Shown one piece after another: positions 13,600 to 62,107 of a stretch of DNA of 64,000 nucleotides (its first letter is position 1; every line of letters starts with the position of its first letter). This stretch comes from Mobula hypostoma (lineage: Eukaryota): NCBI RefSeq assembly GCF_963921235.1, contig NC_086107.1:111662001-111726000 (forward strand), read 5' to 3'. The notes under the pieces are model-generated. The model made no database searches and was not told where the DNA came from. It saw only the letters and a list, made by a program, of their open reading frames with translations. Made by a program: the position numbers and the translations under genes.

Positions 13600-13761
13600 A
13601 CTCCTGATTGGCTCCTTGACACCTTGATTTGATGTTCCACTTTCCCCCTATTTTCCATTGGTTATGGATCCATGAGCAGCTCCTAATTGGCTACCAGGGA
13701 ATGTCAATCATCATGGTGAGGTCAACCCTCACTATCCTGCAGGCTGATCTAGCAGTATAAG
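13600..13761 (+). promoter_or_regulatory. Ferritin A promoter: three inverted CCAAT boxes plus TATA
   Basis: ATTGG at 13607, 13657 and 13686; TATAAG at 13756-13761; blocks GGAATGTCAATCATC and TGCAGGCTGATC.AGCAGTATAAG are shared with the gene B promoter. Confidence 0.7.
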
Positions 13762-13837: not shown

Positions 13838-13939
13838 ATGGCTTCCCAAGTCTGTCAGAATTTCCACAAGGAATGTGAAGATGCAGTCAACAGGCAGATT
13901 AACATGGAGCTCTATTCCTCCTATGTTTATCTCTCCATG
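13838..13939 (+). CDS. Ferritin A (heavy/middle-type subunit, 176 aa) exon 1
   Basis: [34 protein letters not shown], then GTGAGT donor. Confidence 0.95.
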
Positions 13940-14465
13940 GTGAGTCTTTCGTTTACTTGTGTGAGGTTGTAATTCAATAAAGAATTATATTCCTTGTTGC
14001 TAGAAGTCTTGAATTAATGGTTTAGATCTTTCGCTAGTTATTGAAGGGCTTGGAAATTCTAACTTATGACTGTGTGTGTTTGTAAATGAGGTCCTCTGTA
14101 TTCAATTAGCTCAGTTGCTGAGCCCTATTGCAGCTTGTAATGGACATATACTACTGGTGTACAGGTTCTCTTGGAAATCCTGGTGGTCTTTGCAACATGG
14201 GTGTCTGATACCAAGTGGACCATTATTTTAAACCTGAAACAAACAACAGTAAGGAAAGGTAGCATCTCTATTTCTTGTGATTTGCTACTTGGCATAATGT
14301 GACCACCACCAGCATTCATTCACTGAAGAGCTGCAGTCTATAGTGACATCCAGGCTATTTGATACAGTTTGAATTGATATTCAAACTAGCTACAGTTTAT
14401 TAATGAAAGACTAGGATTACTATATTGTGATGAGCCTAACTGAAGCCCTTCTAATCTTTCCACAG

Positions 14466-14612
14466 TCCTTTTACTTTGATCGGGATGATATTAGCCTACA
14501 TCACTTCGCCACGTTCTTCAGGAAGCAGTCCCATGAGGAACAGCAGCATGCCGAGAAATGGATGGAATTTCAGAACCTGCGAGGAGGCCGGATAGAACTG
14601 GAGGACATCAAG
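14466..14612 (+). CDS. Ferritin A exon 2
   Basis: CAG acceptor; SFYFDRDD...QSHEEQQHAEKWMEFQNLRGGRIELEDIK; 147 nt; GT donor; E61, E62 and H65 present. Confidence 0.95.
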
Positions 14613-15115
14613 GTTTGGCGTGACAAATGCAGAGCAGTCTGAATGGTTCAAATAATTGTCAGCAATTAGTAATTCTAATTTCCATCCTCCCATTTCCCAC
14701 ACTGACCTTTTATTACCTCTCACCTGCCTTACTTCCCCTGCAGCCCCTCCTCCTTCCTTTTCTCCTCTGGTCTACTCTCCACTCCATCAGAATCTTTCTT
14801 CTCCAGCCCTTGACCTTGCCCACTCATCTGGCTTCATCTATCACCATCCAACCAGCCTCCTTCCCCTCCACCCACCTTTTTATTCTGGCATCTTCCCCCT
14901 TCCTTCTCAGTCCTGAAGAAGGATCTCAGTTGGAAACAGCTATTCATTTCCACAGATGCTGCCTGACAGCATTTTGTGTGCATCGCTTTTGATTCTAATT
15001 GATGCCTTGGTTTTGGCTGATACAGTATCTCTAATATTCTGCACTGATAGTGTTTGTGACTGTTCCACATATAAGTAAGCTACTCCAAATGAATTGTATA
15101 ACTTTCCCTTTTCAG

Positions 15116-15241
15116 AAGCCAGAGCAGGATGATTGGAGCAATGGTCTGGAGGCAATGCAGAGAGCTCTGCAGATGGAGAAGGACGTGAACCTGAGTCTCC
15201 TGGATCTGCACAAGCTCTCCAATCAGCATGGTGACCCTCAT
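15116..15241 (+). CDS. Ferritin A exon 3
   Basis: [42 protein letters not shown]; 126 nt; AG/GTAAGT. Confidence 0.95.
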
Positions 15242-15682
15242 GTAAGTTGCTATCCATCTATGAAGTTTGGCTAATATGATCAGGGCTTTGCTTTGCTTGG
15301 TCTTCAGCTCGAGCTTTGGCTTCTGTAACATCTAAATCCAAGAGGTAAATTTCTTTTTGAGAGAGCTGGGAACATGCTCCCAGGAGTGGTGGTAAAGGCA
15401 GACACATTCGAGGCATTCAAGAAACTCTTAGATAGGTACATGGATGATGGAGAATTCTAAGGAAGGGTTAGATTGATATTATAGTAGGTTAAAAGGCTGG
15501 CACAATATCATGGGCTGAAGGCCTGTACTGTAATGTTTATGTTCTACTGATTTGGTGAAGATCAGAGGCTGGCTGACAGGGTATTGAAACATGTCCCAGT
15601 AAAACTCTTGATGGGATAAGTGGAAATTCCCATCAATGTCATCTGCACCATTTCATGATGATCACATTCAAATATAGGGTGA

Positions 15683-15889
<207 letters not shown>

Positions 15890-22685: not shown

Positions 22686-25618
22686 CTTGTGTGTCAGTTC
22701 TTTATTTATTTTATTATTTATTTATTGAGTTACAGTGCAGAATAGGCCCTTCCAGTCCTTCAAGCTATGCTGCCCAGCAATCCCCTGATTTAATCAGACC
22801 CCAATCATGAGACAATTTACAATGACCAACCAACCTGCCAACCGGTACATCTTTGGACTTTGAGAGGAAACTCACACAGTCATGGGGAGACAAACTGCTT
22901 TTGGGCTGCGGCGGGAATTGAACCCGGGCCGCCCATTCTGTAATGTGTTGTGCCGTACTGTGTTATGTAGCTTGGTCTGCAGGAATATCCTTTCGTTTGG
23001 CAGTACCGTATACACGTGTATGGTTGAATGACAATAAACAAACTTGAACTTGAAATCAGACTGAATGTTAGTAGATAGCATTCACTGGAATAAATTATGA
23101 TGGAGTATGACTTCTCACTGTGTATGGCACTGTTGCTGCCCCCTGCAGCCAATGCTCAGTCACAAACCCTCTGCCCAGGATAGAATGGGAACCGTTTATA
23201 CCATCCACAGTCAAGTCTTCCCATCTCACTTTGTCATGACTGATTTGAACACTCATTAAAACCATTTGAATGCAAGTGAGCTATTCAAACATAGAGAGAG
23301 TTAAGTCTTATGGAAGATTATTTGAAATGCTTTGAGATTTTGGGTAACACCTGTATTATCCTTGAGAAACTAGGCTATACTTCTCTCCCCTGAAATTTAG
23401 CTAAGAGAGTATTGTCACAACTATGTGTGGAATAAGAATGTAATGCACTCTTGCTCTGGATATCAGCTTCTATGCACCACAGTGGATTTTCAACTAATAA
23501 CCGATTCAGGAGCACTGTGTGTTATAGAAAGACATGTGTTAAATAGCTGAGTTGTTGGGCTGTACTGCATCTCTAAATAAAATAAGAGATGAGAATTTGC
23601 CAGGTACTAACCAATTGAATTCCAGATTGCTCAACATCAGACCTTCATACATAAAATCAAAACATAAGGCAATGGCATTGAATATGTTTATTTATTTATT
23701 TAGAGATCTGCCACAGAACAGGCCCTTCTGGCCCATTGAACGGTACCACCCAGCATCACACCTACTTAACATTACCTTAATCATAGGACAATTGACATGA
23801 TCAATTAGCCTACTGACCAGTACATCTTTGGACTGTGGGAGGAAACCAGATACCTGGAGGAAACCCTCATGCTCCCACGAAGAACGTACAAACTTCTTAC
23901 AGAAGACACTGGAACTGAACTCTGAATTCCAACACCACAAGCCGTGAAAGTATTGCACTAACCGTTACACTACTTGCTTATTCAACTCCTTACAAAATAT
24001 TTCCTTTTAGGTAAGGAAGTGATGCGTGCTGTTATGTGAATTAAAATGTGAAAAGCATTTCCTCGCCTTTGTCTTTGCACCCGGAACCCACATCCCACTG
24101 TTCAACATCATGATTGAACACGTGCTTACTCACAAGAGGAAAATGTCGCATTCCACATTACCAGGTAAAGAACTCAGAATCTTGTTTTCTAATAAAGTGG
24201 CCCTTCACTCTTCTAGATCCCAATAGATACATGCTCAACCTGCCCAATACCTATGGGACTACTAGTTCTCTCCAGCTATCAGTCTGGTAATAAGCTTTCA
24301 AGCACATGATTATCCCTATCATGTGGAATTTTCAGTAGCAAAGTTCGCCATTCACATCTTGAGCTTTTCCGAACAATTTGCATGACTGCTTCCTGCAGGG
24401 CATGATACTGTTTGAAAAATTTGGGGAAAAACTTTACGGCCCTCAGAGGCACACAAATTCATGCAAGGTTCTGCTCTCCCAAGAGGACCTCCATTTTAAA
24501 TAGAACCTCCCATTTTAAATGCACAAAATCTAAACCACAAGAGGATTTTTTCCATCTTGTGAAGTTCTCAGAATGTTGTATTCAAACCAATTACTCATTA
24601 ACTCTTCTACATATCTGCTTAATGTCGTTTCTAGGCACCAAACTGACAGCAGGAATGTGAATTGGCTGCAAGCAATTCTAACTCTGAGATCTCAATTGTG
24701 AGTTATGGCTCAATATTTTCACCTCAGTGTCTCAATCTCTGCACCAATTAAATACAGAGTTTTAGACCAATACAGAGCCTGTCAACAAGTAATTCAGAAG
24801 TGAATGACTCAAGCCAGATGTGATGCTGGAACTGAGAAAAAACAACAATGCAAGTCCAAGAATCCAGAGGGCACTGGACAGTGCAATTTATTTTTAAGTT
24901 AAAAATGTTGTGACTCTCTATACGGCATTCTCTATAAAGAGGACTCCACTACTCTGTACAAGAGGCAACTGGTAACTTAAGGACAAAAAAAAAATTCAGG
25001 AAAGAAATTGGAAAATTGTTTCACAGAGCAAGCACAAGGATGAGGGCCAAATATCCTTCTTCTATTCTTTATGAATCTATATTGGGTCAGATAGATAGAC
25101 AATGCCAAATGTCCTCATTTCAAACAGGTTAAATTACCTTTTAGTCTCACTGAAATCTAACCAGATCTGTGTACAGTATCCTCAGAGTTCAGGCTGAATT
25201 TTACCAGACACCATTTCAATAGAATATAACCCAAACAAATTCAACTTCCCGCAATGCTTTCAACTGTTCCCTCTCCCTGGAGCCAATACTCAGACATATA
25301 CACTCTAGTGGGGAAGAATGAAACTGTCACACCACCCACACAGGTGTTTCTACCTTTCTCTGATAGGTAATTTAAATAAGGAATTGTTTGATTTGATTGC
25401 TTTGAATAGGGTATATACCACCAGTACAGCTTCTGACAGTTTACAACATTGGATATCTAAGAAAGACCATTGCAAATTCAATAATTTGAATATTCAACCT
25501 AAAATTGTAATGACTAGTGTCAGAAATCAAAAACAAATCACATTCTGGCTTCTTCCCCTTTATATTACTCCCCTCTTCCACTCTTGTTTGTGTTGCTCAG
25601 ATTCATGGACAATTCCCA

Positions 25619-25694
25619 GTTGGTTATTGGGAATGTCAATCATCGTTGTGAAGAAATCTTTTAATTACACTGCAGGCTGATCCAGCAGTATAAG
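25619..25694 (+). promoter_or_regulatory. Ferritin B promoter, paralogous to that of A
   Basis: ATTGG-GAATGTCAATCATC...TGCAGGCTGATCCAGCAGTATAAG; TATA at 25689-25694. Confidence 0.7.
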
Positions 25695-25780
25695 AACCAA
25701 AGAACTGAGTAAGTGATATAACTTTTTTTTTGTTTGGAGCTTCCTGAGTGGTTGTGAGGTGGATTCTTGTAGAGAAGAGG

Positions 25781-25882
25781 ATGGGTTCCCAAGTGTGTCA
25801 GAACTACCACATTGAATGTGAGGTTGCTGTCAACAACCAGATTAACATGGAACTCCATTCCTACTATGTTTATCGCTCTATG
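25781..25882 (+). CDS. Ferritin B (divergent, predicted ferroxidase-dead, 174 aa) exon 1
   Basis: [34 protein letters not shown], then GTGAGT. Confidence 0.9.
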
Positions 25883-26529
25883 GTGAGTCTTTCATTCCAT
25901 GTTTGAGGTTGTCCCTTGCTGAAATATTTGTATACTGTAGGATTCCATTAAGTAAATAGTCCTAACTTCACCTGTAGTCCATAAAGGGGAAAGTGAAACT
26001 TTTTGTAATTAAAGTTCTCTAATTGCCTGGTATTCAATAGATTCTCTGGAAACCAACTCCTCCAGTGGATGTGAAGCCTGGTGTTCAGATTGTCCTTAAA
26101 GGCATAGCTATAGTAGTTTGCATGATGCTATTATAGCTTGAGGTGTCTGAGTTTGAATTCAATCCTGGTGGCCTTTGTAAGAAGTCTTTGTATGTCCTCC
26201 CTGTGGAATATATAGGCTTTCTGAGTCCACTGGTTTCCTACCACAGTCTTAAAATCTGACTAGTTAGGTTAACTGGTCACTGTAAATTGTTGTGTGATTG
26301 GGGTAAAACTGAGGATGGTGTAGCTTGAAGGGAAGGGTCTATTCTGTGCTGTCTCTCTAAATAAATTGTTTAAAGAGCATTATTTCTTTCAGTTAAAAGG
26401 TATAAAACTTTGATAATGTTTCTTATGTCTACTAGGATCACTGTGTTTCCCCTGTCTGCTCATCAATCCCCCCTTCAAGCACTTATTCCTGTAACTATTT
26501 TACCTGCCCTACACAATCTCCTTCACCAT

Positions 26530-27185
26530 TGTTCAGGGCCCCAAACTGTCCTTCCAGATGAGACACTCCACATAGGACTCTATTAGGGTTGTTCACTGTA
26601 TTGGTGTTCCTGGTGTGGCCTCCTCTACATCAGTGAGATCAAAAGTAGAATGGGGAAAGTGCTTGATCAGGTACCTTTAACTCAATCTTTTGCAACAACC
26701 AATAGCTCCTGGTGACTAGCCACTTTAATTCCACTTCCCATTCCCACACTGTCTATCCACTGCCTCCTATGCTATCACATTGAGGCCAGAAGAAGATTGG
26801 AGGAGCAGGACTTCATTTTGTCTTGATGGTTTCCAACCTGCTGGCATTGACATTAATTTCTCTAACTTGTAAATGTTCCCCCTCTGATTTCTTCTCTCAC
26901 CCCCCTGCCCCTGTTTTCTCTAGTTCTGTCCCTTTCACCTTCCCTCTCCTTCTGGTTTCCCCACCTCCTTTTCTTTATTCCACAACTGTCCTCAAGGTTC
27001 CTTCTTTAATCCTTCCCTCTTCCACCTATCACCTCCAACTTCTCAAATCACTTGCTTTCTTCCACCCCCCCCCCCCAAAAACACGAGTTTTATATGCCTC
27101 CCCTGACCCCATGACTCTTTCCAATGTTGATGAAGGGACTTGGCTTGAAATGTTGACTGTCCACTTCCTTCTAAAAGTTTGACCT
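26530..27185 (+). mobile_element. Degenerate PLE (GIY-YIG end plus terminal region) in ferritin B intron 1
   Basis: CGLLYISEIKSRMG-like remnant, similar to 63838-64000. Confidence 0.6.
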
Positions 27186-27762
27186 GGGTGCTACTGAACC
27201 AATTGCAGTACATCATTTAAAATGACATTGGGGTTCAATTCCTCAATGTACTTCAGGGATAGTTTATATTCAATGCTGATACTAGTAACAGGAAAGTTCA
27301 GTTTGTATTAATCAGGAGTGCTGCATACACAAGGTCCTTGGTATTGTCAATGATCCTTTGCAGCAGTCCAATGATCTCTTTGACCCCTACCATCAGGCAG
27401 GAGGTACCATAACATTAGGACAAGGACTGCTAGGATGGGAAATGGCTTTCCTTTCCTCCCCCCTGTCTCCCACCCCCTAGGCAGTGAGATTGCTGAACTC
27501 ACCACACCATCCAGGTATTAATGTATGAAGGGCCAATAGCATTATACTGTTTGCTCTTTAAACTTGTGTCCTAAATGTACCTTGTTTATTTGGTAATTTG
27601 TGTGGCAATATTACCTTGTGTCAGTTGTATGTACTTTGTACACCTTGGTTTGCAGGAACATTGTTTTGCTTGCTGGTATACATGAATATGGTTGATGACA
27701 ATGGACTTGATCAGAGCAGTAAACTGAAATCCAAATAAAGGTATTCTAATCTCTCTCCACAG

Positions 27763-27909
27763 TCCTTGTACTTTGACCAGGATGATGTTGCCTTGCACCG
27801 CTTTGCTGACTTCTTCAGGAAGCAGTCCAATGAGAAATGGAAGCGTGCTAAGAAACTTCTAGCATTCCAGAACCTGCGTGGTGGCCAGATCTTGATGGAA
27901 GACATAAAG
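27763..27909 (+). CDS. Ferritin B exon 2
   Basis: SLYFDQDDVALHRFADFFRKQSNEKWKRAKKLLAFQNLRGGQILMEDIK; 147 nt; AG/GT intact. Confidence 0.9.
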
Positions 27910-28386
27910 GTTTGCCTTGACAAATTGAGTGGTGCCATAGTGTGGCTATTAGTGCAATGCTTTGCAGTGCTGGTTGTAAGATTGGGGTTCAATTCCTGCT
28001 ACTGTCTGTAGGGAGATTGTACAATCTCCCCATTACCGTGTGGGTTTCCTCCAAGTGCTTGGGATTTCGAAGGCTGAAAGAATTCTGGCTAATGAGTTGT
28101 GGACATGCTACATTGGTGCTGAAAGCATGGTAACACCTGTGGACTGCCTTGCTGATTTAATGCAAACAGCACATTTCACTGTCTTGATGCACATGGGACA
28201 AATAAAGCTGATCTCTAAATGCAAAGCAGTCAATCTGATTCCATCAAACTCTTTATCTAATCCTGTCTAAATGATACCCTTTTTGGCAACAGCTTCTATA
28301 CTCTTGTTGTATTGTCTTTGTAGTGGTTTGCTTATTTGTTTAACATGCCTAGTTCATTTCAATTGAAGTGTTGCATTTCTTGGCAG

Positions 28387-28512
28387 AAATCCGAGCAGAG
28401 TGATTGGGTTAATGGTCGTCATGCAATGCACAGAGCTCTACAGATGGAGAAGGATGTGAACCTGAGTTTACTGGATCTGTACAAACTTGCCACTCGGCAT
28501 GGTGACCCCCAA
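28387..28512 (+). CDS. Ferritin B exon 3
   Basis: [42 protein letters not shown]; 126 nt; AG/GTAAGT. Confidence 0.9.
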
Positions 28513-28741
28513 GTAAGTTGCGAGCCCTCTGATGTAAGGGGAAACTGGTGGGAGCTCCATTCAGAGATGTGGTTACTTAGGCTTGCTGTGTGTGTGTGTG
28601 TATAAGACTAGACACGGAAGCAACAATGGATAGGATTTGATAAGCAGTCCCTACAGCTTCAATTCCACCAATATGTAATGTTCCAATCCAAAGGGCTTCA
28701 AATCTAAGGAGGGGAAACCTCAGGGTGGTTATGTACATATT

Positions 28742-29682
28742 TCCATAAGACAAAGGAGCAGAATAGGGCTATTTAGCCTATGAGTCTGCTCTACCATTTA
28801 TCCATTGCTGATTAATTCTCTCAACTCCATTTTTCCTGCCTCCTCTCTGTAATTTTTGATGTTCTTGCTAAGCAAGAACCCATGTACATCTGCTTTAATA
28901 TACCCAATGACTTGATCCTCACAGCCATCTGTGGCAATGAATTCCAGATTGTCCAACCTCTGGCTAAAGAAATTTCTCATCTCAATTCTAAAGGGATGTC
29001 CTTCTATTGAGGTTCTGCCCACGAGTCCTAGATGCTCACACTATTGAAAACATCTTTCGATGTCTATTCTATCTAGGTTTCAATGAGATTTTCCCCCTCA
29101 TTCTTCTAAACTCCAGTGAGTTCAAGCCCAAATCTATCACACATGTTAACCCTTTCATTCCTATGATCATTCTTGTGAATGTTCCCCTGGACACTCTCCA
29201 AATGCCAGGACACCTTTCTTGGATTTCTTAAGGGCCAGAAACTGCTAATACTCCATAATAGTCTGACCAATGCCTTGTAAAGCTTTGGCATTAGTCCTTG
29301 CAAAATTAATGCTAACATTGCATTTGCCTTCCTTACTACTGACTCGGCCTGCAAGTTCATCATTAGAAAATTCTGTACTAGGACTCCCATGTCCCTTTTT
29401 GCAGCACAATGTCTGAATTTGCTTTCCATTTAGAAAACAGTCTACACCTTTATTCCTTCTACCATGTGCATGACCATACACTTCCCTACACTGTTTTTCA
29501 TCTGCTACTTTGCCCATTCTCCTAATCTGTCCAAATCCCTCTGCAGAATCCCTGCTTCCTCAACACTTCCTGTCCCTACACTGTCACAAAGCTATCAGTT
29601 CAGTTACCCAGGTCAGTGACGTATAACATGAAAAGAAGCAGTCCCTATGGAGTGCCTCTAGTCACAAGCAGCCAATGAGAAG
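28742..29682 (-). mobile_element. Degenerate CR1 LINE in ferritin B intron 3
   Basis: VVRKANAMLA, LYKALVR, GHPFRIEMRNFFSQR. Confidence 0.8.
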
Positions 29683-29744
29683 CATCACTGGCAGGAGTGG
29701 AAATATTCAAGATTTCTGGATGTAACTTCCAACTTTCCTTCCAG

Positions 29745-29894
29745 CTGTGTTCCTTCCTGGCAAGACATCTGCTGGATGAACAAACAATGATAATGAAGAG
29801 ACTTGGAGATCACATCACCAACCTGAGGAGACTGGGAGCCCATGAGAATGGCCGGGGAGAGTACCTGTTTGATAAGCTCTCCCTAGGGGAGTGA
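29745..29894 (+). CDS. Ferritin B exon 4
   Basis: [49 protein letters not shown]. Confidence 0.9.
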
Positions 29895-29987
29895 ACAAGT
29901 AGACTTGATGTTGAAACCTTCTGTCAGAGTTCTTGTCTAATGAAATGTGACATGATTTATGCAAAGCTGAGTCTAATGTCAATTGGA

Positions 29988-29993
29988 AATAAA
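29988..29993 (+). terminator. Polyadenylation signal, ferritin B
   Basis: AATAAA about 95 nt after the stop codon. Confidence 0.65.
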
Positions 29994-36695: not shown

Positions 36696-37172
36696 CTATG
36701 TCACAATTGCGTAGAGGTTAGCACTGCTATTACAGTACTGGCTGTCAGAGCTCTGAGCTCATTCCCGGCGCTCTCTGTACGTCCTCCCCGTAGAATGTGT
36801 GGGTTGTTTTTCCAGGTCCTCTGAACACCCTGCCGCATCACATTTGACCAGCTAAACTGTTCTGTACCTGATAATATTTAATTTACGTTCTTCACTTTAT
36901 TCTTAATTCATTTGAAGATTTTTATCCTTATTTTCTTAAGTTATTGTGTGTTTATGTATGCTACTGAGCTTTACACCCTGGTTTGGAGAAATGTGGTCTC
37001 ATTTGATGGTACACATGTACATAGTTAAATAACAATAAACTTGATTTGAGTTGAAGTGAAGATAATCTAGAATCCTGAAGATCACATCATCAACTTGGAG
37101 AGACTGGGAGCCCCTGAGAATGGCCTGGGAGAGAATCTGTTTGACAAGCTCTCCCGGGAAGAGAGTAAATAG
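36696..37172 (+). pseudogene. Ferritin C: orphan exon 4 broken by a SINE/repeat insertion
   Basis: CCAG|CTATGTCAC (LCH) at 36696, insertion, then [37 protein letters not shown] (37056-37172); 3' flank TAGAAGGACTTGA matches gene A. Confidence 0.85.
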
Positions 37173-38928: not shown

Positions 38929-40065
38929 TTAACTATATTTCCCGATGTGTGTTTGTTGAATAGATATTCAGCTATTTCATTCCAGGGAGCACCAAGATGA
39001 TGCAAGTTTGTAATGTGGACCCTGTTAGGGCATATTCTGGAGTTAGCAAATATTAACTGCACCAGCAACCAATCTTCAGGCATGAACAAGGATGTTAGGT
39101 TGAATTTAAAATGCAGCCCTGAACAATTGTTTTCCTGGAGCTGTGCACTGGAATTGATTGCAAACCAGACAATGCTGATTAACGCAAACACGAGGAATTC
39201 TGCAGATGCTGGAAATTCAAGCAACACACATCAAAGTTGCTGGTGAACGCAGCAGGCCAGGCAGCATCTCTAGGAAGAGGTACAGTCGACGTTTCGGGCC
39301 CAGACCCTTCGTCAGGACTAACTGAAGGAAGAGCTAGTAAGAGATTTGAAAGTAGGAGGGGGAGGGGGAGGGGGAGATCCAAATTGATAGGAGAAAACAG
39401 GAGGGGGAGGGATGGAGCCAAGAGCTGGACAGGTGATTGGCAAAAGGGATATGAGAGGATCATGGGACAGGAGGCCCAGGGAGAAAGAAAAGGGGGGGGG
39501 AACCCAGAGGATGGGCAAGGGGTATAGTGAGAGGGACAGAGGGAGAAAAAGGAGAGAGAGAAAGACCTTACAACACCTTATATTCCGTCTGGGTAGCCTC
39601 CAACCTGATGGCATGAACATTGACTTCTCAAACTTCCGCTAATGCCCCACCTCCCCCTCGTACCCCATTCGTTATTTATTTATATACACACATTCTTTTT
39701 CTCTCTCTCTCTCCTTTTTCTCCCTCTGTCCCTCTCACTATACCCCTTGCCCATCCTCTGGGTTTTTCCCCCCTTCCCCTTTTCTTTCTCCCTGGGCCTC
39801 CTGTCCCATGATCCTCTCATGTCCAGTCCTGACGAAGGGTCTCAGCCCGAAACATCGACTGTACCTCTTCCTAGAGATGCTGCCTGGCCTGCTGCGTTCA
39901 CCAGCAACCTTGATGTGTGTTGCTTGAATTTCCAGCATCTCCAGAATTCCTCGTGTCTACACTGTAGCTATATTGTAACTATAGAATTGTTCTACTGTTA
40001 GCTTTGATATTTGGCATAGTCTTGACTTGTTTTTCAAAATATTGAGTATCCAGAAACTCACACAA
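38929..40065 (-). pseudogene. Ferritin D (inverted): exon 4 split by a ~1-kb insertion
   Basis: TACAG|LCEFLDTQYFEKQVKTM (40065-40015) and HITNLHHLGAPWNEIAEYLFNKHTSG (39017-38940). Confidence 0.85.
39182..39957. mobile_element. Inverted pair of PLE termini inside pseudogene D exon 4
   Basis: Arms are reverse complements of each other; hammerhead cores at 39284-39319 (-) and 39825-39860 (+). Confidence 0.75.
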
Positions 40066-43000: not shown

Positions 43001-43467
43001 TCTTTCTTGGTTTCATGGCTACCTGGAGAATTGAAGAGTTTCAGAGTTGTATACTTTGATAATAAATGAAGCTTTGAACATACCGATTCTCCTCAAAATC
43101 CAAATGAAATATCACCACATTTTCTATTGCTCACATCATTAAGGGGTCAATTTACATATCTAAAGGAAATAATTCACTAAATCAAGTGGAATGAATTCAA
43201 AAATCTCATTAAGATGTAATTTGAGCACACTGTAAATGTATTAGTCTAGTGTGTACTCCTGTGTTGTAAATGGACTGAACTTCAAACAAAAATTCCACAC
43301 CAGAGATCTGAAGAATTTTGAAACCATGATAATCCTTTATAACAACCCCATCAAAGATATTGGCAACATTGGTTGAAAATCTAAATTCCTTTTCACTGAC
43401 AGATTTTCTTCCTCATGCATGTTGAATTTTCAAAAATTGTAAAGTCTGTTTTTTTTTTAATACTTAC

Positions 43468-43590
43468 ATGAGGGTCAATTCAATCCTTGGACAACTTATA
43501 TAACTCCAGAAGATGTTGATTAAATTTCTTCTCAACTTGCAGTGCACTTTGCATTGTCTGCAAACCATTATCCCAGACTTGCTCTGGCTT
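43468..43590 (-). pseudogene. Ferritin D (inverted): exon 3 with in-frame stop
   Basis: TTTAG|KPEQVWDNGLQTMQSALQVEKKFNQHLLELYKLSKD*IDPH|GTAAGT; 123 nt (one codon short). Confidence 0.9.
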
Positions 43591-48720: not shown

Positions 48721-48972
48721 ATGGGGAGCTTGTGGCGAGCGTGGCCGGCTGTGGCGGTGGGCTTGTTCCCGAAACGGGGCTTGCCCTGTCGCCTCCAGTG
48801 CAGGGTTGGCCCGCCGCTCTGGACCGAGGGGCGGGGGCAGCCCCGGAGGGCAGCTCAGTGCGGGCAGAGCCACGGTCACTCGGTGCGCCAGAACTATTCC
48901 AGGGAGTGCGAGGAGGCGATCAACCAGCAGATCAATCAGGAGCTCAGCGCTTTCTACGTCTACCTGTCCATG
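48721..48972 (+). CDS. Ferritin E (226 aa, putative mitochondrial ferritin) exon 1 with 50-aa N-terminal extension
   Basis: MGSLWRAWPAVAVGLFPKRGLPCRLQCRVGPPLWTEGRGQPRRAAQCGQS-HGHSVRQNYSRECEEAINQQINQELSAFYVYLSM, then GTGAGA donor. Confidence 0.9.
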
Positions 48973-49025
48973 GTGAGAGAGAAGACAGGTTCTCACTCCC
49001 CAGCGGGGTGGTCACAGACTCCCGG

Positions 49026-49415
49026 CCCAGCAGGGAGAACTAGACTGTCTTAACACATCTTCTGAAAAAATCCCAGCAGCGAGAACCAGACCTCATTAAT
49101 TTGAACACATTTCCCTAAATACCAGCAAGAGAACTAGACAGTCTCACCACACTTCCCGAATACCAGCAGAGAAACAGGACCTCCTAATTTGAACACATTT
49201 CCGAATACCAGTAGGGAGAACGAGAATGTCTTACCACATTTTCTGAAAAGTCCTAGCAGGGAGAACCAGACCTCATAATTTCAACATACTTCCCGAATAC
49301 CAGCAGGAAGAACTAGACAATCTTATCACATTTACTGAAAGATACCAGCAGAGAAAACAGGACCTCATAATTTGACCATAGTTCCCGAGCACCAGCAGGG
49401 AAAACCTGACCATCC
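49026..49415 (+). repeat. Minisatellite, ~45-bp units alternating A/B (about 9 units)
   Basis: Units begin (A/C)CCAGCAGRGARAAC; alternate TAGAC.GTCTT.CAC and CAGACCTCATAATTTGAAC. Confidence 0.8.
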
Positions 49416-49595
49416 CAGTAAAGAGACTGGACACGTTCCACTTAACAAAATCCACCAATGTACATTATATCCCGGTAGGGAAACCGTCACACACCAGCAG
49501 GAATATCCAGCATAGCCCACGTAGAGCCATAAATCACGACCTAGAAGCAGGCCCTTCAGCCGGTCTAGTACATGCCAAACAATCACCAGGTTATT

Positions 49596-50057
49596 CTGGT
49601 GAACGCAGCAGGCCAAGCAGCATCTCTAGGAAGAGGTACAGTCGACGTTTCAGGCCGAGACCCTTCGTCAGGACTAACTGAAGGAAGAGTGAGTAAGGGA
49701 TTTGAAAGCTGGAGGGGGAGGGGAAGATGCAAAATGATAGGAGAAGACAGGAGGGGGAGGGATAGAGCCGAGAGCTGGACAGGTGATAGGCAAAAGGGGA
49801 TATTTTGCCTATCACCTGTCCAGCTCTCGGCTCTATCCCTCCCCCTCCTGTCTTCTCCTATCATTTTGCATCTCCCCCTCCCCCTCCAGCTTTCAAATCC
49901 CTTACTCACTCTTCCTTCAGTTAGTCCTGACGAAGGGTCTCGGCCTGAAACGTCGACTGTACCTCTTCCTAGAGATGCTGCTTGGCCTGCTGCGTTCACC
50001 AGCAACTTTGATGTATGTTGCTTGAATTTCCAGCATCTGCAGAATTCCTGTTGTTTG
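49596..50057. mobile_element. PLE-derived palindromic insertion in ferritin E intron 1
   Basis: Arms 49596-49795 and 49803-50002, 7-nt spacer; direct repeat ACCAGGTTATTCTG at 49585-49598 and 50058-50071. Confidence 0.85.
49923..49958 (+). ncRNA. Minimal type I hammerhead ribozyme motif (PLE-associated)
   Basis: Helix I AGTC/GACT, core CTGACGA, stem II GGGT(CTCG)GCCT, GAAA, palindromic ACGT helix III, GUC site. Confidence 0.65.
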
Positions 50058-50355
50058 ACCAGGTTATTCTGCCTTGTTCTATCTGCCTGAGCCTGAATCA
50101 TAACCCACCATACCCCTCCTATTGAAGTACTTATCGAACCTCGCACTTCCAAATCCCCCCTTAAATATTTAACCTTTTCCCTTAACCCATGACTTCTTGT
50201 TCTAGTCCCACCTAACCTCAGTGGAAAAAGTCTGCTTGCATTGACCATATCTATACCTTTCATAATTTTGTATACCTCTATCAAATCTCCCTTCATTCTC
50301 CAACACTAATTAAGTGGTGAAGCAAGCATATAAAGGCTGCATAGTGCCTCTAATC

Positions 50356-50430
50356 CAAGGGTTCCCAACTGGGGTCCATGGACTCCTCAGTTAATAGACT
50401 CCATGGCATAAAAACGTTTAGGAAACCCTG
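50356..50430. mobile_element. hAT MITE copy
   Basis: Same family as 40858; perfect 8-bp TSD CTCTAATC. Confidence 0.8.
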
Positions 50431-53400
50431 CTCTAATCCTTTCATACAGTCTCAATAACTCCAGGAGGATACAAATACAAAAATGTCACCTAATCCCAGC
50501 AGTGTTATGCATCGTATATGCTCATATAATCTAAATGTCACTCCTTAAAATTCAATACATTGCCTCTCAACACCATTATCAATTCATACTATCGACTGCC
50601 ATAGTGTCTTGGCTCGTGGCCCAGGTTTCACCCCTTTTCTTACAGCATCACAACTCCGGTTTAGCCTTTGGTGCTGTCTCTGTGGAGTTTGTACATTCTC
50701 CCTATATCTGAATGAATTTATCCTGTAGTTCCACCCCACATCCTAAATATATACAGGTTGGGAGGTTAATTGGCCTCTGTAAATTGCCCCAGGTGTGTAG
50801 TTCGACATCAGTGTATATGGGGAGATTAAAATGAGATTATTGTAAATGGGTGCTTGAAGGTCAGTACAGACTTGTGTAGGCCAATAGGCCTGTTTCTGTG
50901 CTGTATGACCCATTCTACTGCAATCCAACAGGTTTGCAAATCATAAACACAAAGGATTCTGCAGATCCAAAGGGCTGAAGGAACTCAGCAGGAAAGGCAG
51001 CATCTATGGAAATGAATAAACAGTTGACATTTCAAGCCAAGACCCCTCATCAGGACTGGAAAGGAAGAGGGAAGATGCTGGAATAAAAAAAGTGGGAGGA
51101 GGGGGATGAGAATTAGCTAGGAGGTGATAGGTGAAGCCAGATGGGTGGGAAAGGAAAAGGGTTAGAGAGGAAGGAATCTGATAGGAGAGGAGAGTTGACT
51201 ATGGGAGAAAAGGAAGGAGGGGAACCAGAGGGAGGTGATAGACAGGTGAGGAGAAGAGGTAACAGACCAGATGGGGAATGGAAGGGGGGAGACTAAAAGA
51301 AAAAAAAAGTTGCCAGAAGTTGGAGAAATCAATGTTCTTGCCATCAGGTTGGAAGCATGATAAATCAGCCATGATGAAATGATGTAGCAGACTTGATGGG
51401 CCGAATTGGTTAATTCTGCTCCAATATCTTGCCTAGACAGTATATTAGGTGCTGCTCCTCCACCCTGAGAATAGCCTCAACCTGCCAGGAGGAGACCATG
51501 AACCGAAATGTTGGAACAGAAATGAGGATTAGAATTGAAACAGTTGGCCCCATTTTACAAATACAAAAATAAAGTGTGAGCAATTACTTTAGAAGTGACA
51601 TGTAATAGAGCATTTGTTTCAAATAAAACATTTTCAATAGAAACTATGGCAACAGATAATTCTCGGATGAGATTGAGGCCAAACTCAGTGGCTATCTTTG
51701 CAAAAAAGGAACAGGATGACAGAAGCAAATGCTGTTTCCTAGACACCTGAACTAAAAGTAGATGTAATATACTACAGACATCATCCTTAAAGAAAGAACA
51801 ACTTAACCTTTTAAGTTGAAGACCAATTACCGAATTAGATGTCTGAAATTACCATTTTTGAACAAACATTTTGGATTATTAAAATACGAGCCAGAGGTAA
51901 ACCCAACAAAGTTGTTTTGAGGTATTCGATGTCATGTGCATAATTGATGCTACATACCAAAGTTAATACCACCTATAGGGTCACATGTCAACTTTCAGTG
52001 CTAAGAAGATTAAAGTTTATTTAGCGTGAAGATTGTGGAATTTCCACAATTAATGCAGTGCCACTGAACGATATTATAGTAATGGTTAATAACTGTTTGT
52101 AATATAAGAAGCGGTTTAGCTAATTTATGCGTAACATGCTCCCGACAGCAGCATGGGAGTGTTAGTGTGCTTTTAGTATTGGAAGTTGAAGGAGAAATAT
52201 TGTCCAGGACACTGGGAGCAAAAATCCTGCTCTTTCTCAAAATTGTACCAATTGGATTATTTTCAAAAGTGTCTGGCAATGGCTATCTCCAACAAGAGAT
52301 TCAAAGCATTTACGGTTGGCATTTAATGGCATTACTTGCTGAGTTTTCATCAGTACCCTGGAGGCCAAATTTGACCAGAAATTCAAATGGACCAGTCACA
52401 GCTTCAGGAGAATTGACTCATATCCTGACACCTCAAAGCTCTTCCACATTTTGAATGTTTCACTAACTTGGATGTGTATGGCTCCATCATAACTCAAGAA
52501 GCTTGTACCTACCCAGAACAATAATTGGTTGGCACCCTATCCACCACCATAAACATTCATTCTCTCCACCACCATTTCACTGCGTCTGCACTTTGTGTCA
52601 TTTACAGCAACTGCCGAAGCTGTGATCTCAATCAGCAGGAAGGGCACACACAACAAAAGAATGGGAATATCTTCCCCTCCATGTAACACACTATCCTGAC
52701 TTGTCATTGCTGTGATCAAATCATAGAACTTAACCAACAACCAACACTCTTATCAAAAATATGATAAATAAGGGTGTGCATTCTGAAAGTGAATTAAAAA
52801 ATACACCACCTGGAGGGCAGATGAGTATTAACATCTTATCTGAAAGAAGACATTTTCAACAATGGATAGCACACTCAATACAGGGACTGAAACCCACAAC
52901 CTTCTGATTCAGAGGAGAGAGTGCTACAGCTGAGCTTCAGTAAACTATCTTTAGGAGTGCTAAGAAGCTGGTCGGGTGCCCTGGTTGTAGATAGAAACAC
53001 AGAAGTGCTGGTTAGGATTCATGAAGTATTACAGCACAGTACAGACCCTTCAGTGTACAATGTCACACTGACCTTTTAACTCACTCTAACCCTTCCCTCC
53101 TACATAGCCCTCCATTTTTCTATCATCCATATGCCTATTTAAGAGTTTCTTAAATGTCCTTAGTACATTTGACTCTACAATCACCCTTGGCAGGGTGTTC
53201 CACAGAGCTACCAGTCTCTGTAAAAATTATCTCTGACATCCCCCCTAAACTCTCCTCCAAACACTTTAAAATAATGCATCCTCGTCTTAGCCATTTCTGC
53301 CCTGGGAAAAAGTGTCTGGCTATCCACTCGGTCTAGGCCTCTTATCACCTTGTACACATTCCTAGGATCTTGACCAACAACAGTGAAAGGAAGATGGGTT

Positions 53401-54320
53401 ATCCCAAAGTGGTGTGCACTTTGAGAACGTTACATATGATATTCAGGAGCTACAGTTGTCAGGGGCAGGAACAACATGTAATCCTCATTCCTGATTCCCT
53501 TTGAAAAGGTGATGGTAGTTTGCCACATGAAGTACTGACTTATTGGTGAACGTGCTTCCACAGTGTTGTTGCGTAAGAAATTCCAGGTTAAGACCCAGTG
53601 ACAGAGGAGCAATCAGACAATTTACCTCAAGCCAGGATAGTATTCAACTTGGAGACGGACAGGATTGATGCCTTTGCCAAACATCATCAGCCCTTGTCCT
53701 CCGAGGTGGTGGTGGTTGCACTTGTGGAAAATACTGTTGAAGTATTTGTGATTGCAGTAGGTTTATTAGATGCTACAATGCAATGTGATGGAGTGTGTAA
53801 AAAATTAGGGTGATATTGGTGCTCCAGTGAAATAGGCTTTATCTAGGATTGTTATGATTTTCTTCAGTGTTGTAGGTCTACTCACCCACGCAGATGGACA
53901 GTTTTCCATTATCCTCCTGACGTATGATGCTGGAAGGGCTGTGGATAATCAAACCTCTTCACTTAAGCCCATCACCCCTACTGAGCCATAGGCCGCTGAC
54001 AGCAGCTCGCCAGAGTCCTCTGTCCTGGCCCAATCTTTCAAGTTGTCCCCAGGTGTAGACCTTTATCTTGGTCTATGCTTATCCTTCCTCTTCCTGGGAT
54101 GAGGTCTATTGGCCTTACAGTAGCTCTAGGGTTTTACGGGATGGGGTTGCTAGCCTCCGCCTTTTGGAGTTGAGATTGGGACCGTCCTTGGCGGAAGATG
54201 TGGGGAGTCAAAAGTTGTCCAATAATCTTCCTACTGACTAAGCTGCAGTTACAGCCACAAGGCTTTATGTGACTCGTCCCACTAAATTTACAGTACCAAC
54301 ATTGCTTGTTTTTGTTTCAG

Positions 54321-54467
54321 TCATATTACTTCGACCGTTATGATGTTGCTTTGAGAAACTTTGCCAAGTTTTGCTTGGAGCAGTCTGCTGAAGAGCAGAA
54401 GCATGCTGAGAAGCTGATGGAGTTTCAGAATATGCGTGGAGGCAGCATTGTCCTGTATGATATCAAG
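54321..54467 (+). CDS. Ferritin E exon 2
   Basis: [49 protein letters not shown]; 147 nt; AG/GTTAGT. Confidence 0.95.
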
Positions 54468-55674
54468 GTTAGTGGGAGAGAAGTATCCCCATCATCTTCA
54501 TCACTTTTCTCATCCCGTCTTTTGAAATAAGAATAACTTTACAAGATGAGGGTGTTGGATAGGTGATCGTAAGTCATTTTCAGTATAACTTCGGTAATAG
54601 TGTCGGTGTGCAGAGTGACCTGTGTGTCAATCCAATTGAATCCCTGAAGTCAAAGTGCGGGTAACTTAATTACTTACTGTCCATTATGCCGCTGGTGTTT
54701 AGGGAAGCAATGAAGATCCTCTATCTCCGTCTGTACAGAAAGGTTCTTCATTGCTGTTTCCATAACAATCGCTTTTTGATAAGTCAGGGTTGTTAGCCCT
54801 GAGCTGAACCCCCAAACCCAGAGGATTTGTGGACCACTCTGAGTCTGGCTTCTACCCTTTGACCTGCTTGGCATGGGTGACCCTACCAGGAGCCAAAGCA
54901 CAAGACCCTGACTCCAGCCAACATAGCTCTCCGGGACATTGAGGCACGCAAGCCTCCAAACCCTATGACAACGTTGTGCAGGGAAAGCAGAGGTATAAAA
55001 GGTCATGAGGGACACACAATGTGAAAGCACGTAGTGTTTTCCTGGGGAGGGGTGTTAAAAACAAGAAGGCATGCGTTTAAAGCCAGAGGCAAGAGATTTA
55101 AGTGGGACATCAGGGGCAGCTTCTTCTCACAAGGGGTAGTGTGTATTTGGAGTGGGCTGCCAGTGGGTTGAGGTGGGCAAATCTTGATAAGGATATGAAT
55201 AGGAGAGGTTTAAAGGGCTGTGGGCCAAATGCAGGTAGATGGGACTAACTCACTGGACAATGCAGTCAGCATGTTAGGATGAATGCTGTATGATTGTAAT
55301 AAGGAACACAAATAGCGCATTGGGCTTTATGCAAGAGAGTTTGAGAATAACAGTAATGTCTTCTTACTGGAATTACATCAGCTCTGATTAGCCATGTTCT
55401 TAATGAATGGTAGAACAGATACAAAAGATCAAAATGGCCTTTTCTACTTAATTTCTATTTGTGAACAGAAGGGCCTGTATATGGCAGCATTATTTGCCAT
55501 TATCATTCTTGTTGAAAGAGGTTGGGAGGAGCTTTAGCCGACACAAGTGATATAGATTTTATACACGTTACACAGTACAGGCACTTTGTGTCAGAGGTGG
55601 AGCTGGAACCTGTTTGTTAATAGAGCCCCAATCATACATTCTATTGGACGCTGTGAAGCTTCTCGTGTTTTCAG

Positions 55675-55800
55675 AAACCTTTCCAGGATGAATGGGGCAG
55701 CGGCTTAGAGGCAATGGAGCATGCATTGGAGCTTGAGAAAGAGGTCAATCAAAGCATTCTGAACCTGCACAAGCTGGCAAGTGAACAGAACGATCCAAAT
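55675..55800 (+). CDS. Ferritin E exon 3
   Basis: [42 protein letters not shown]; 126 nt; AG/GTAAGT (absent from the ORF track). Confidence 0.95.
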
Positions 55801-57504: not shown

Positions 57505-58585
57505 GCCTATACAAAGGGATCTGGGAGTACAGATCCACAATTATTTGAAAGTGGTGTCTGTTATGTTTTGTAACTTCAAAATATTAAACTCATTTAGAGG
57601 AAGACATGTGAGTCTAACTTCGGGTTTACTTTAAGCGAGGTGCGCATTTATCAATTGGTAGCATAATGATGTAGGCAATTTGCGTATTTATACGTACAGT
57701 ATAACCCATAATGAATTATTGAAATGAACCAAAAATGCTTAACCTATATGTTTGTGTGTGTGTATATATATACACACAAACACACACACATACATTAATA
57801 CAAGATTATTCAAATAATAAAAAAAATTATATACACAACAGTCTCACAGGTAGATAGGGTCGTAAAAAGCGCTTTTGGCACATCAGCCTTCAGAAGTGAG
57901 AGAGTGAGAGTATTGAATACAGGAAGTAGGATGTTATGTTGAAGTTGTATAAGACATTGGTGAGGTCTAATTTGGAGTATTTATGTGCATCTATGTACAG
58001 GAAGTATATCAATAAGATTGAAATACAGAGAAAATCTACAAGGATATTGCCAGGGCTTGAGGATCTGTGTAATAGGGAAAGGTTGAATAGGTTAGGACTT
58101 TATTCCCTAGAGCAGCCGTTCCCATCCTTACTTATACCATGGATCAATACCATTCAGCAAGGGGTTCATGGACCCCAGGCTGGGAATCCTTGTCCTACAT
58201 TATAAGAAAATGAGAGGAGATTTGATAGAAGTATACAAAATTATGAGGGGTATAGATAGGGTATATGCAAGTAGGCTTTTTTCCACTGAGGTTGGGTGAG
58301 ACTAGAACTAGAGGTCATGGGTTAAGGATGAAGGGTGAAATGTTTAAGGGCAACATGAGGGGAAACATCTTCACTCAGAGGGTGAAAGCGTGGAATGTGC
58401 TATCAGTGGAAATGGTGAATGCAGGTTCTATTTCAACATGTAAGAGAAATTTGGAAAAGTATATGCATGGGAGAGGTACAGAGAGCTATGGTCCAAGCGC
58501 AGGTTGATGGGATGAGACAGAGTATCAGTTCAGCATGAACAAGATGGGCTGAAGGGCCTGTTTCTGTGCTATAGTGCTCTATGAC
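57505..58585 (+). mobile_element. CR1 3' fragment with nested insertions, in ferritin E intron 3
   Basis: MLKLYKTLVRSNLEY, TRTRGHGLRMKGEMFKGNMRGNIFTQR. Confidence 0.8.
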
Positions 58586-61818: not shown

Positions 61819-61915
61819 GTCAAAAGAGCAGTGATTGATACTCCTAACAGTCATAGCATGTGGTGGTTTTGGAGTTTGTGTTTCCCGTGTTGGATGAATT
61901 AAGCGATGATGTTGA

Positions 61916-62107
<192 letters not shown>

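What the first reader, a model, noticed from the sequence alone, without database searches (positions are those of the whole stretch)
25781..29894. Intact but iron-incompetent ferritin paralog: ferroxidase site, inner glutamates and 3-fold channel all altered
Seen: open frame, all splice sites, promoter and polyA signal are intact. Yet helix B QSHEEREHAE has become QSNEKWKRAK (E62K, E64K, H65R, E67K), the 3-fold channel is changed (H118Y, D131S, E134A), Y137 is Leu, and 4-fold channel L165 is Arg. Hand count: 23 D/E vs 24 K/R, against 32 vs 21 in paralog A. Known: E62/H65 substitution abolishes ferroxidase activity, D131/E134 are required for Fe2+ entry, and L-chains lose ferroxidase activity but keep acidic nucleation sites and the channel, which this copy does not. 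Inference: a repurposed cage subunit (cationic lumen for anionic cargo, a modulator in heteropolymers, or a nuclear/germline role analogous to mammalian FTHL17) rather than an iron store.
Basis: partly seen in the sequence, partly recalled or inferred. Interest (0 to 1): 0.8.

Follow-up and report, generated by a model that had tools for sequence, protein, structure and literature searches.

The report
Conserved catalytically dead ferritin in rays
This is an intact ferritin-like gene of manta and stingrays that lost its iron-entry, iron-oxidising and iron-nucleating residues long ago yet has been kept almost unchanged, so it most likely has a job other than storing iron, much like the mammalian ferritin FTHL17.

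Summary
The window is a Mobula (devil ray) ferritin gene array. The four exons at 25781-29894 splice GT-AG in phase 0 into a 174-aa ferritin, 100% identical to a RefSeq model, "ferritin heavy chain, oocyte isoform-like".

It is not a decaying copy:
- Syntenic, intron-containing orthologs exist in two stingray genera. They are about 91% identical to the Mobula protein and 100% identical to each other over 177 aa.
- They share E62K, E64K, E67K, D131S, loss of E134, Y137L, L165R, L35R and L97R.
- H65R and H118Y are Mobula-only.
- The clade has a long stem (0.36 substitutions per site) and short crown branches.
- About 170 nt of proximal promoter is conserved with the catalytically intact neighbour A, while the introns no longer align.
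- Other ferritin relics in the same array carry stop codons.
- No iron-responsive element was found.

Best reading: a selectively maintained, ferroxidase-dead ferritin-fold subunit. It is probably a non-catalytic partner of neighbour A, or it has a non-iron role. This converges with tetrapod L chains (K62) and with FTHL17.

Expression, cage assembly and DNA-level dN/dS could not be tested here. I class it as a new variant of a known kind, of moderate interest.

The parts
25600..25780 (+). Proximal promoter and short 5' UTR of paralog B. Blocks conserved with paralog A lie at 25629-25644, 25670-25682 and 25684-25694. The last block holds TATAAG at 25689-25694.
   Evidence: This is the only non-exonic stretch that aligns between the A and B loci. 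39 of 40 block positions are identical, against 55% expected at neutral sites for dS 0.68 (P about 2e-9). No IRE was found by Rfam or by a motif scan.
25781..25882 (+). Exon 1 (34 codons, ATG to a phase-0 GT donor). It encodes helix A, with E27 and Y34 retained and L35R.
27763..27909 (+). Exon 2 (49 codons). It encodes helix B with QSNEKWKRAKK: E62K and H65R in the ferroxidase centre, and E64K and E67K on the inner nucleation face.
28387..28512 (+). Exon 3 (42 codons). It encodes the BC loop and helix C, with L97R, E98H, E107 retained and H118Y.
29745..29894 (+). Exon 4 (49 codons plus TGA). It encodes helices D and E, with D131S, E134A, Y137L and L165R. E140 and Q141 are retained.
29987..29992 (+). 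AATAAA polyadenylation signal, 93 nt after the stop codon. It lies in a block shared with A's 3' UTR.
13838..15889 (+). Paralog A, a 176-aa protein with the same exon structure and a canonical ferroxidase centre. It is the upstream neighbour, shares the promoter, and is the likely co-expressed partner.
   Evidence: The A-then-B order with a gap of about 9-10 kb is conserved in Hemitrygon, Hypanus and a second Mobula assembly.

Best explanation
Paralog B is a functional, selectively maintained ferritin-fold subunit specific to Myliobatiformes (manta and devil rays plus stingrays). Its three iron-handling modules were dismantled in the ancestor of the clade.

1. Oxidation. E62, which bridges the di-iron site, is Lys. 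This is the same change as in tetrapod L chains and in the laboratory ferroxidase-null mutant. Mobula adds H65R. I infer that the two cationic side chains pair with the retained E107 and E27 and plug the site.
2. Entry. The acidic 3-fold pore residues D131 and E134 are Ser and Ala/Thr.
3. Nucleation. E64 and E67 on the cavity face of helix B are Lys.

The subunit still folds as a ferritin. It carries no IRE, so it lies outside IRP control. It keeps a core promoter shared with its catalytically intact neighbour A.

The most likely mechanism is inferred, not shown. B is co-expressed with A, probably in germline or oocyte, and co-assembles into 24-mers as a non-catalytic subunit. There it lowers the number of active centres and acidic pores and makes the inner surface less acidic. 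This would be a convergent, nucleation-less counterpart of an L chain.
For: Intact gene: open frame and GT-AG splice sites.

Ferritin membership: Pfam PF00210 at 101 bits. The AlphaFold2 model has pLDDT 87.9 and TM 0.95 to human H chain.

Orthologs in Hypanus sabinus and Hemitrygon akajei:
- They are syntenic and contain introns, with gene ranges of 4056 and 4089 nt against 4114 nt here, and a ferritin gene upstream.
- They share E62K, E64K, E67K, D131S, loss of E134, Y137L, L165R, L35R and L97R.
- They are identical to each other over 177 aa. A-type retrocopies in the same two genera differ at 6 residues plus an indel.
- The protein is identical in two Mobula assemblies.

Tree: the B clade has 100/100 support, a stem of 0.36 substitutions per site, and crown branches of 0.07 and 0.035. 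The 37 stem substitutions shift net charge by +9, and +6 of that falls on helix B. B is the most positive of 157 homologs compared.

Divergence between Mobula and Hemitrygon over exons 2-4 is 13 residues for B and 11 for the catalytically intact A.

Promoter: it is conserved with A while the introns cannot be aligned.

Open frame: a neutral copy of this age would keep an open frame in under 1% of simulations, and sister relics in the array carry stops.

Germline transcription: an intronless copy of B on another chromosome of Hypanus (540-nt gene range for 179 aa) implies transcription in the germline.

Residue roles from the literature:
- E62K/H65G is ferroxidase-null (PMC4029007).
- D131A abolishes rapid Fe2+ oxidation, and E61/E64 anchor the core (PMC12022971).
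Against: - There is no direct evidence of expression. The 15-billion-protein collection holds B-type proteins only from genome annotations, none from transcript assemblies.
- Ortholog DNA could not be fetched, so no dN/dS or branch-site test was run.
- Since the split from stingrays, the Mobula branch is about twice as long as the stingray branch and three times as long as the Mobula A branch. It includes H65R and H118Y, so some relaxation in Mobula is possible.
- A purely 'null' diluent subunit does not obviously explain conservation stronger than that of the A-type retrocopies within Dasyatidae. A specific new interaction would explain it better.
- Cage assembly, heteropolymer formation and the K62-E107 and R65-E27 pairings are all inferred.
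Confidence: 0.45

Rival explanations
1. B forms its own cages or smaller oligomers with a non-iron role. The neutral-to-basic inner face (K57, K64, K67, K68, plus R65 in Mobula) would bind an anionic partner such as nucleic acid, polyphosphate or phosphate, or an acidic protein. Alternatively the protein acts in the nucleus of germ cells, as proposed for FTHL17.
For: All three iron modules were removed at once, and the basic replacements have been kept for the life of the clade. Conservation between stingray genera is perfect and stronger than for the A-type retrocopies, which suits a specific new interaction. B is the most positive of 157 homologs. The retrocopy implies germline transcription. 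FTHL17 is a precedent: no ferroxidase activity and partly nuclear (PMC5312872 citing Ruzzenenti 2015).
Against: Net charge is only about +1 in Mobula and slightly negative in stingrays, far from engineered supercharged cages. The KRAK motif exists only in Mobula, where stingrays have KHAK. The promoter shared with A favours co-assembly. No lumen model and no binding data exist.
Confidence: 0.27
2. B is still an iron store. It takes up and mineralises iron slowly without a ferroxidase centre, as L-chain homopolymers do, or it uses the retained E27, E61, E107, E140 and Q141 as a weak site.
For: Five of the seven centre or transit residues are conserved in all B orthologs. L-type ferritins mineralise iron without a ferroxidase centre (PMC12022971, discussion).
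Against: L chains keep D131, E134 and the acidic nucleation cluster. B lost both (one search shows amphibian L-type rows keeping D131, E134, E64 and E67). D131A alone abolishes rapid oxidation in FtMt (PMC12022971). There is no IRE, so no iron-responsive translation.
Confidence: 0.1
3. In Mobula the gene is a relaxed duplicate on its way to becoming a pseudogene. It is intact only by chance and is annotated only because the frame is open.
For: The Mobula branch is longer than the stingray branch and adds hits to functional residues (H65R, H118Y). There are no transcript-derived sequences. L35R and L97R could be destabilising.
Against: L35R, L97R and most other changes are shared with stingray orthologs that are under strong constraint. 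The protein is identical in two Mobula assemblies whose gene ranges differ by 133 nt. Promoter blocks, splice sites and the polyA signal are all kept. True relics in the same array have stops and missing exons.
Confidence: 0.1

Closest known systems
Mammalian FTHL17 (ferritin heavy polypeptide-like 17)
   Same: A ferritin H-derived paralog with the ferritin fold that lacks ferroxidase activity and an iron-storage role, and is linked to germline expression (PMC5312872). A rhinoceros FTH-like hit that may belong to this group (not verified) shows H65L, D131S, E134K and net charge +2, the same pattern as B. Mammalian FTHL17 mRNAs also lack an IRE (my own knowledge).
   Different: It arose independently. 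B nests inside a chondrichthyan-specific H-like clade and keeps all three introns and the parental promoter in a tandem array. FTHL17 genes are X-linked and intronless in mammals (my own knowledge). B changes E62, E64 and E67, which the rhinoceros protein keeps.
Tetrapod ferritin L chain
   Same: A non-catalytic partner subunit with Lys at position 62 and E107 retained. The K62-E107 salt bridge is established knowledge. L chains co-assemble with H chains. Amphibian L-type hits show E62K and H65Q.
   Different: L chains keep D131 and E134 and an acidic nucleation cluster (E60, E61, E64, E67), and they have Q141E. B lost the pore acids and turned E64 and E67 into Lys. There is no orthology: cartilaginous fish sequences form separate clades.
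Neighbouring paralog A and the elasmobranch 'oocyte isoform-like' H ferritins
   Same: Same four-exon structure with phase-0 introns, 70% amino-acid identity, a homologous promoter, and no IRE.
   Different: A keeps E27, Y34, E62, H65, E107, Q141, D131 and E134 and has net charge -11. B carries 37 clade-specific substitutions.
Artemin and avian ferritoid (ferritin homologues with non-iron roles)
   Same: Precedents for ferritin-fold proteins repurposed as chaperone, RNA-binding or nuclear-transport factors (my own knowledge, not tested here).
   Different: Those carry added domains or tails that fill the cavity or provide an NLS. B has no extension at all: 174 aa, aligned without gaps to H chains.

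Membership tests
Ferritin family (Pfam PF00210), eukaryotic 24-mer subunit | Ferritin-like four-helix bundle plus a short C-terminal E helix | tested here: met
   PF00210 at 101 bits against a cut-off of 24.5. The AlphaFold2 model has helices at 11-39, 46-72, 93-120, 124-154 and 162-170, with pLDDT 87.9. TM is 0.95 to human, mouse and frog H/M chains. Alignment to solved chains is gapless.
Ferritin family (Pfam PF00210), eukaryotic 24-mer subunit | Assembly into a 24-subunit cage | not testable with these tools
   Only a monomer could be predicted. L165R at the 4-fold axis and R63W are conserved in all B orthologs, but their effect on assembly is unknown.
H-type (catalytic) ferritin | Complete ferroxidase centre: E27, Y34, E62, H65, E107, Q141 | tested here: not met
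   E62K in all B orthologs and H65R in Mobula. 103 of 157 homologs compared keep all six residues.
H-type (catalytic) ferritin | Acidic 3-fold pore (D131, E134) | tested here: not met
   D131S in all B orthologs. E134 is Ala in Mobula and Thr in stingrays.
IRP-regulated cytosolic ferritin (FTH1/FTL type) | Iron-responsive element in the 5' UTR | tested here: not met
   No Rfam IRE at gathering threshold in the whole window, and none at E up to 10 in 24700-25850. The motif scan found no convincing C-bulge/CAGUGN hairpin upstream of B or A.
L-type ferritin | Inactive centre with K62 plus an acidic nucleation cluster on helix B | tested here: not met
   K62 is present, but E64K, E67K and H60N leave only E61 on the nucleation face. 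Phylogenetically B lies inside a chondrichthyan H-like clade.
FTHL17-like germline ferritin | Ferroxidase-dead H-derived paralog with germline-restricted expression and partial nuclear localisation | tested here: inconclusive
   The sequence criterion is met. For expression there is only an indirect hint, the intronless retrocopy in Hypanus. It is not orthologous, being an independent origin in rays.
Unprocessed pseudogene | Disabling mutations, loss of regulatory signals, neutral divergence among orthologs | tested here: not met
   No stop or frameshift and all splice sites intact. The promoter is conserved. Orthologs are intact and 91-100% identical. By contrast, the relics at 37038-37163, 38937-39017 and 43462-43590 carry stops.

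The most novel reading that the evidence does not exclude
B assembles into cages whose inner surface is basic rather than acidic, and these package or sequester an anionic cargo (RNA, DNA or polyphosphate) in ray germ cells or embryos. This would be a natural counterpart of engineered positively charged ferritin containers, evolved from an iron store by about 37 substitutions.
Probability: 0.12. Interest if true: 0.8.

Novelty: new variant of a known kind. Interest (0 to 1): 0.42.

Why it matters
Ferritin is a textbook case of a cage whose entry pores, catalytic centre and nucleation face are each tied to a few acidic residues. Here a vertebrate lineage replaced all three sets at once and then held the result nearly constant across two ray families.

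That gives a natural, independently evolved comparison for mammalian FTHL17, whose function is still unclear. It also compares with the H/L division of labour, in a group (cartilaginous fish) that has no L chain.

If the protein co-assembles with its neighbour A, it shows how a non-catalytic partner can arise by tandem duplication with a shared promoter. If it acts alone, it is a candidate natural non-iron ferritin cage.

The practical payoff is modest until expression and assembly are shown.

Tried and rejected
1. Ortholog DNA for dN/dS. The look-up of encoding contigs located the genes in GCA_030144855.1, GCA_048418815.1, GCA_030028105.1 and GCA_963921235.1 but returned no DNA because the files are too large. 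Only protein-level rate comparisons were possible.

2. Representative-library search with exon 2. No representative was more than 62% identical, because B-type proteins are folded into ordinary ferritin clusters at 50% identity. The route that worked was a profile made from a shark ferritin plus the four exon translations, followed by cluster listing.

3. IRE search by Rfam at gathering and permissive thresholds, plus a hand-written motif scan. Nothing credible was found. The best motif hit, at 13410, has a poor stem and no Rfam score.

4. Relative-rate test of A against B with C as outgroup. B has 21 unique residues against 10 for A, P = 0.07. Synonymous sites to C are saturated.

5. Polarising Mobula against stingray changes with outgroups. 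Most sites were ambiguous because of homoplasy, for example R65 recurs in several elasmobranch paralogs.

6. Charge sign test on the stem substitutions (12 up, 6 down, P = 0.24). The direction alone is not significant. The concentration on helix B and the pore is the informative part.

7. Literature searches for elasmobranch ferritin expansions or this paralog found nothing relevant.

8. The top structural hit being a 'positively supercharged' human ferritin variant was rejected as meaningless, because all H chains score the same.
Full report
**What is in the window**

The window is vertebrate DNA carrying a tandem array of ferritin H-like genes.

- The finding (paralog B) has four exons at 25781-25882, 27763-27909, 28387-28512 and 29745-29894. 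All introns are phase 0 and GT-AG. They give a 174-aa open frame.
- Paralog A lies upstream at 13838-15889. It encodes 176 aa with the same exon lengths.
- Paralog C lies downstream at 48721-62107. It encodes 226 aa with an N-terminal Arg-rich extension. In the tree it groups with shark and ray proteins that carry similar N-terminal extensions, which I take to be mitochondrial-ferritin-like.
- Between B and C lie three decayed ferritin fragments with in-frame stops.

B is 100% identical to protein P0270, a RefSeq model of Mobula hypostoma named 'ferritin heavy chain, oocyte isoform-like'. The same sequence carries a second accession from another assembly. The annotated gene range in GCA_963921235.1 is 4114 nt, exactly the span found here.

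**Checking the observation**

Gapless alignment to solved H chains fixes the numbering at residue index + 3.
- H60N, E62K, E64K, H65R and E67K in helix B.
- H118Y, D131S and E134A at the 3-fold pore.
- Y137L, L165R, L35R and L97R.

E27, Y34, E61, E107, E140 and Q141 are retained. The hand count of charges is exact: 23 D/E and 24 K/R in B, against 32 and 21 in A. Calculated pI is 7.8 for B and 5.2 for A.

Among 157 full-length homologs collected here, B has the most positive core charge, +2 against a median of -8. Of those homologs, 103 keep the full ferroxidase sextet.

**Is it a real, maintained gene?**

Several independent lines say yes.

1. *Orthologs.* The only proteins more than 71% identical to B in a 5.8-billion-cluster database are one cluster from Myliobatiformes. 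It holds Mobula, Hypanus sabinus (two copies) and Hemitrygon akajei.

2. *Synteny.* One Hypanus copy and the Hemitrygon copy contain introns, with gene ranges of 4056 and 4089 nt. Each sits downstream of another ferritin gene. In Hemitrygon that neighbour is the A ortholog, about 9 kb upstream. This matches the A-then-B order in the window, where the gap is 9.9 kb.

3. *Shared changes.* All orthologs share E62K, E64K, E67K, H60N, R63W, D131S, loss of E134, Y137L, L165R, L35R, L97R and E98H. These changes therefore predate the split between Myliobatidae and Dasyatidae. H65R and H118Y are found only in Mobula.

4. *Rates.*
   - The Hypanus and Hemitrygon B proteins are identical over 177 aa. Intronless A-type copies in the same two genera differ at 6 residues plus an indel.
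   - Over exons 2-4, Mobula and Hemitrygon differ at 13 residues in B and 11 in the catalytically intact A.
   - In the maximum-likelihood tree the B clade has 100/100 support. Its stem of 0.36 substitutions per site is the longest internal branch. The crown branches are short, 0.072 and 0.035.

5. *Regulatory DNA.* Between the A and B loci only the exons and about 170 nt of proximal promoter still align. The introns do not. Within the promoter, 39 of 40 positions in three blocks are identical, including the TATAAG at 25689-25694. The synonymous divergence of 0.68 predicts 55% identity, so P is about 2e-9.

6. *Open frame.* A copy evolving neutrally for half of that divergence keeps an open frame in about 0.6% of simulations, counting substitutions only. 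The relics in the same array show what decay looks like.

7. *Retrocopy.* A second Hypanus copy on another chromosome has a 540-nt gene range for a 179-aa product. It is therefore intronless and differs from its parent at 2 residues. A retrocopy requires the parent mRNA to be present in germline cells. This is the only evidence for expression, and it is indirect.

**What the changes should do**

- E62K with H65G is the standard ferroxidase-null H-chain mutant (PMC4029007).
- In human mitochondrial ferritin, D131A abolishes rapid Fe2+ oxidation and E134A lowers Fe2+ delivery. E61 and E64 anchor the nascent core on the inner surface (PMC12022971).
- B therefore lacks the bridging catalytic ligand, the acidic entry pore and most of the nucleation face.
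- The 37 substitutions on the clade stem shift net charge by +9. Of that, +6 falls on helix B.
- On the helix-B face that carries E61, E64 and E67, B reads K57, N60, E61, K64, K67, K68 and A71. That gives net +3, against -1 in A.
- Lys62 also occurs in tetrapod L chains, where it pairs with E107 (established knowledge). The amphibian L-type hits show E62K and H65Q but keep D131, E134, E64 and E67.
- I infer that K62, and R65 in Mobula, neutralise the retained E107 and E27. That would explain why those glutamates stay conserved in a dead site. This is inference only.

**Fold and regulation**

- The protein is a confident ferritin. Pfam PF00210 scores 101 bits. The AlphaFold2 model has pLDDT 87.9, four long helices and an E helix, and TM 0.95 to human, mouse and frog chains.
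- No iron-responsive element was found anywhere in the window or upstream of A or B.
- A and B therefore lie outside IRP control, as do FTMT and FTHL17 in mammals (my own knowledge).

**Most likely mechanism and rivals**

That B is functional and cannot oxidise or funnel iron normally seems likely, about 0.8.

- *Preferred (0.45).* B is a non-catalytic partner co-expressed with A from the shared promoter. It co-assembles into cages and reduces active centres, acidic pores and inner-surface acidity.
- *Rival: non-iron role (0.27).* B acts as its own cage or in the nucleus, as suggested for FTHL17 (PMC5312872). This fits the very strong conservation of the basic replacements. It is weakened by the modest net charge and by the KRAK motif being Mobula-only.
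- *Rival: slow L-like iron storage (0.10).* This is disfavoured by the loss of the pore and nucleation acids.
- *Rival: decay in Mobula (0.10).* This is suggested only by the longer Mobula branch. The identical protein in two Mobula assemblies and the intact signals argue against it.

**Comparison with known systems**

- B is a member of the ferritin family, but it fails the tests for catalytic H type, IRE-regulated ferritin and L type.
- It works most like FTHL17 but arose independently. It nests within a chondrichthyan-specific H-like clade, apart from the canonical FTH1, FTMT-like and M-like clades. It also keeps its introns and parental promoter.
- Loss of ferroxidase residues is common in this elasmobranch clade. 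H65R or H65Q occurs in sawfish, skate, white-shark and basking-shark paralogs, and in the Hemitrygon A ortholog.
- What is unusual in B is the combination of losses and its long retention.
- I found no paper describing it.

**Limits**

- No ortholog DNA could be fetched, so there is no dN/dS.
- There are no expression data.
- There is no multimer model.
- Divergence times and neutral rates for these rays were not available from the tools.

Noticed in passing
window 48721-62107 (+): Paralog C is an intron-containing ferritin with a 50-residue Arg-rich N-terminal extension and a complete ferroxidase centre. It has the same three phase-0 introns. In the tree it groups with Narcine, Mustelus and Heptranchias proteins that carry similar extensions (100/100). 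This suggests that mitochondrial ferritin in cartilaginous fish is a spliced member of this array rather than a retrogene as in mammals.
   Followed up: partly
window 37038-37163 (+), 38937-39017 (-), 43462-43590 (-): Three decayed ferritin exon relics with in-frame stops. One is exon-4-like on the + strand. The other two are exon-3-like and exon-4-like on the - strand. Hemitrygon has a weak 109-aa ferritin call on the - strand about 9 kb downstream of its B ortholog, so the inverted relic may be old.
   Followed up: partly
window 25629-25644 and 13697-13712: A 16-nt block, GGGAATGTCAATCATC, is identical in the A and B promoters. Its reverse complement resembles, from memory, a PBX-MEIS composite site next to a TEAD (CATTCC) motif. 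This may point to the tissue in which both genes are expressed.
   Followed up: no
outside the window: Hypanus sabinus and Hemitrygon akajei (P0167, P0268, P0273): Intronless ferritin copies with open frames. There is one B-type retrocopy in Hypanus (540-nt range). A-type retrocopies sit on a chromosome of about 66 Mb in each genus (519 and 528 nt) and carry ferroxidase-site damage, for example E61G in Hypanus.
   Followed up: partly
outside the window: shark ferritin clusters (P0166, P0163, P0176, P0201): Clusters at 90% identity with 69-180 member sequences in single shark species (Heptranchias perlo, Pristiophorus japonicus, Chiloscyllium plagiosum, Stegostoma tigrinum). This points to very large recent expansions of this H-like ferritin clade in sharks. 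I found no paper on it.
   Followed up: no
outside the window: Cetorhinus maximus P0280: A basking-shark 'middle subunit-like' ferritin has E62K and H65R but keeps E60, E61, E64, E67, D131 and E134. This may be a true L-chain analogue in sharks, in contrast with B.
   Followed up: no
outside the window: Hemitrygon akajei P0301: The syntenic A ortholog in Hemitrygon has H60Y and H65R. One annotated isoform starts at an alternative first exon about 80 kb upstream. So even the 'intact' neighbour has lost a ferroxidase ligand in stingrays.
   Followed up: no
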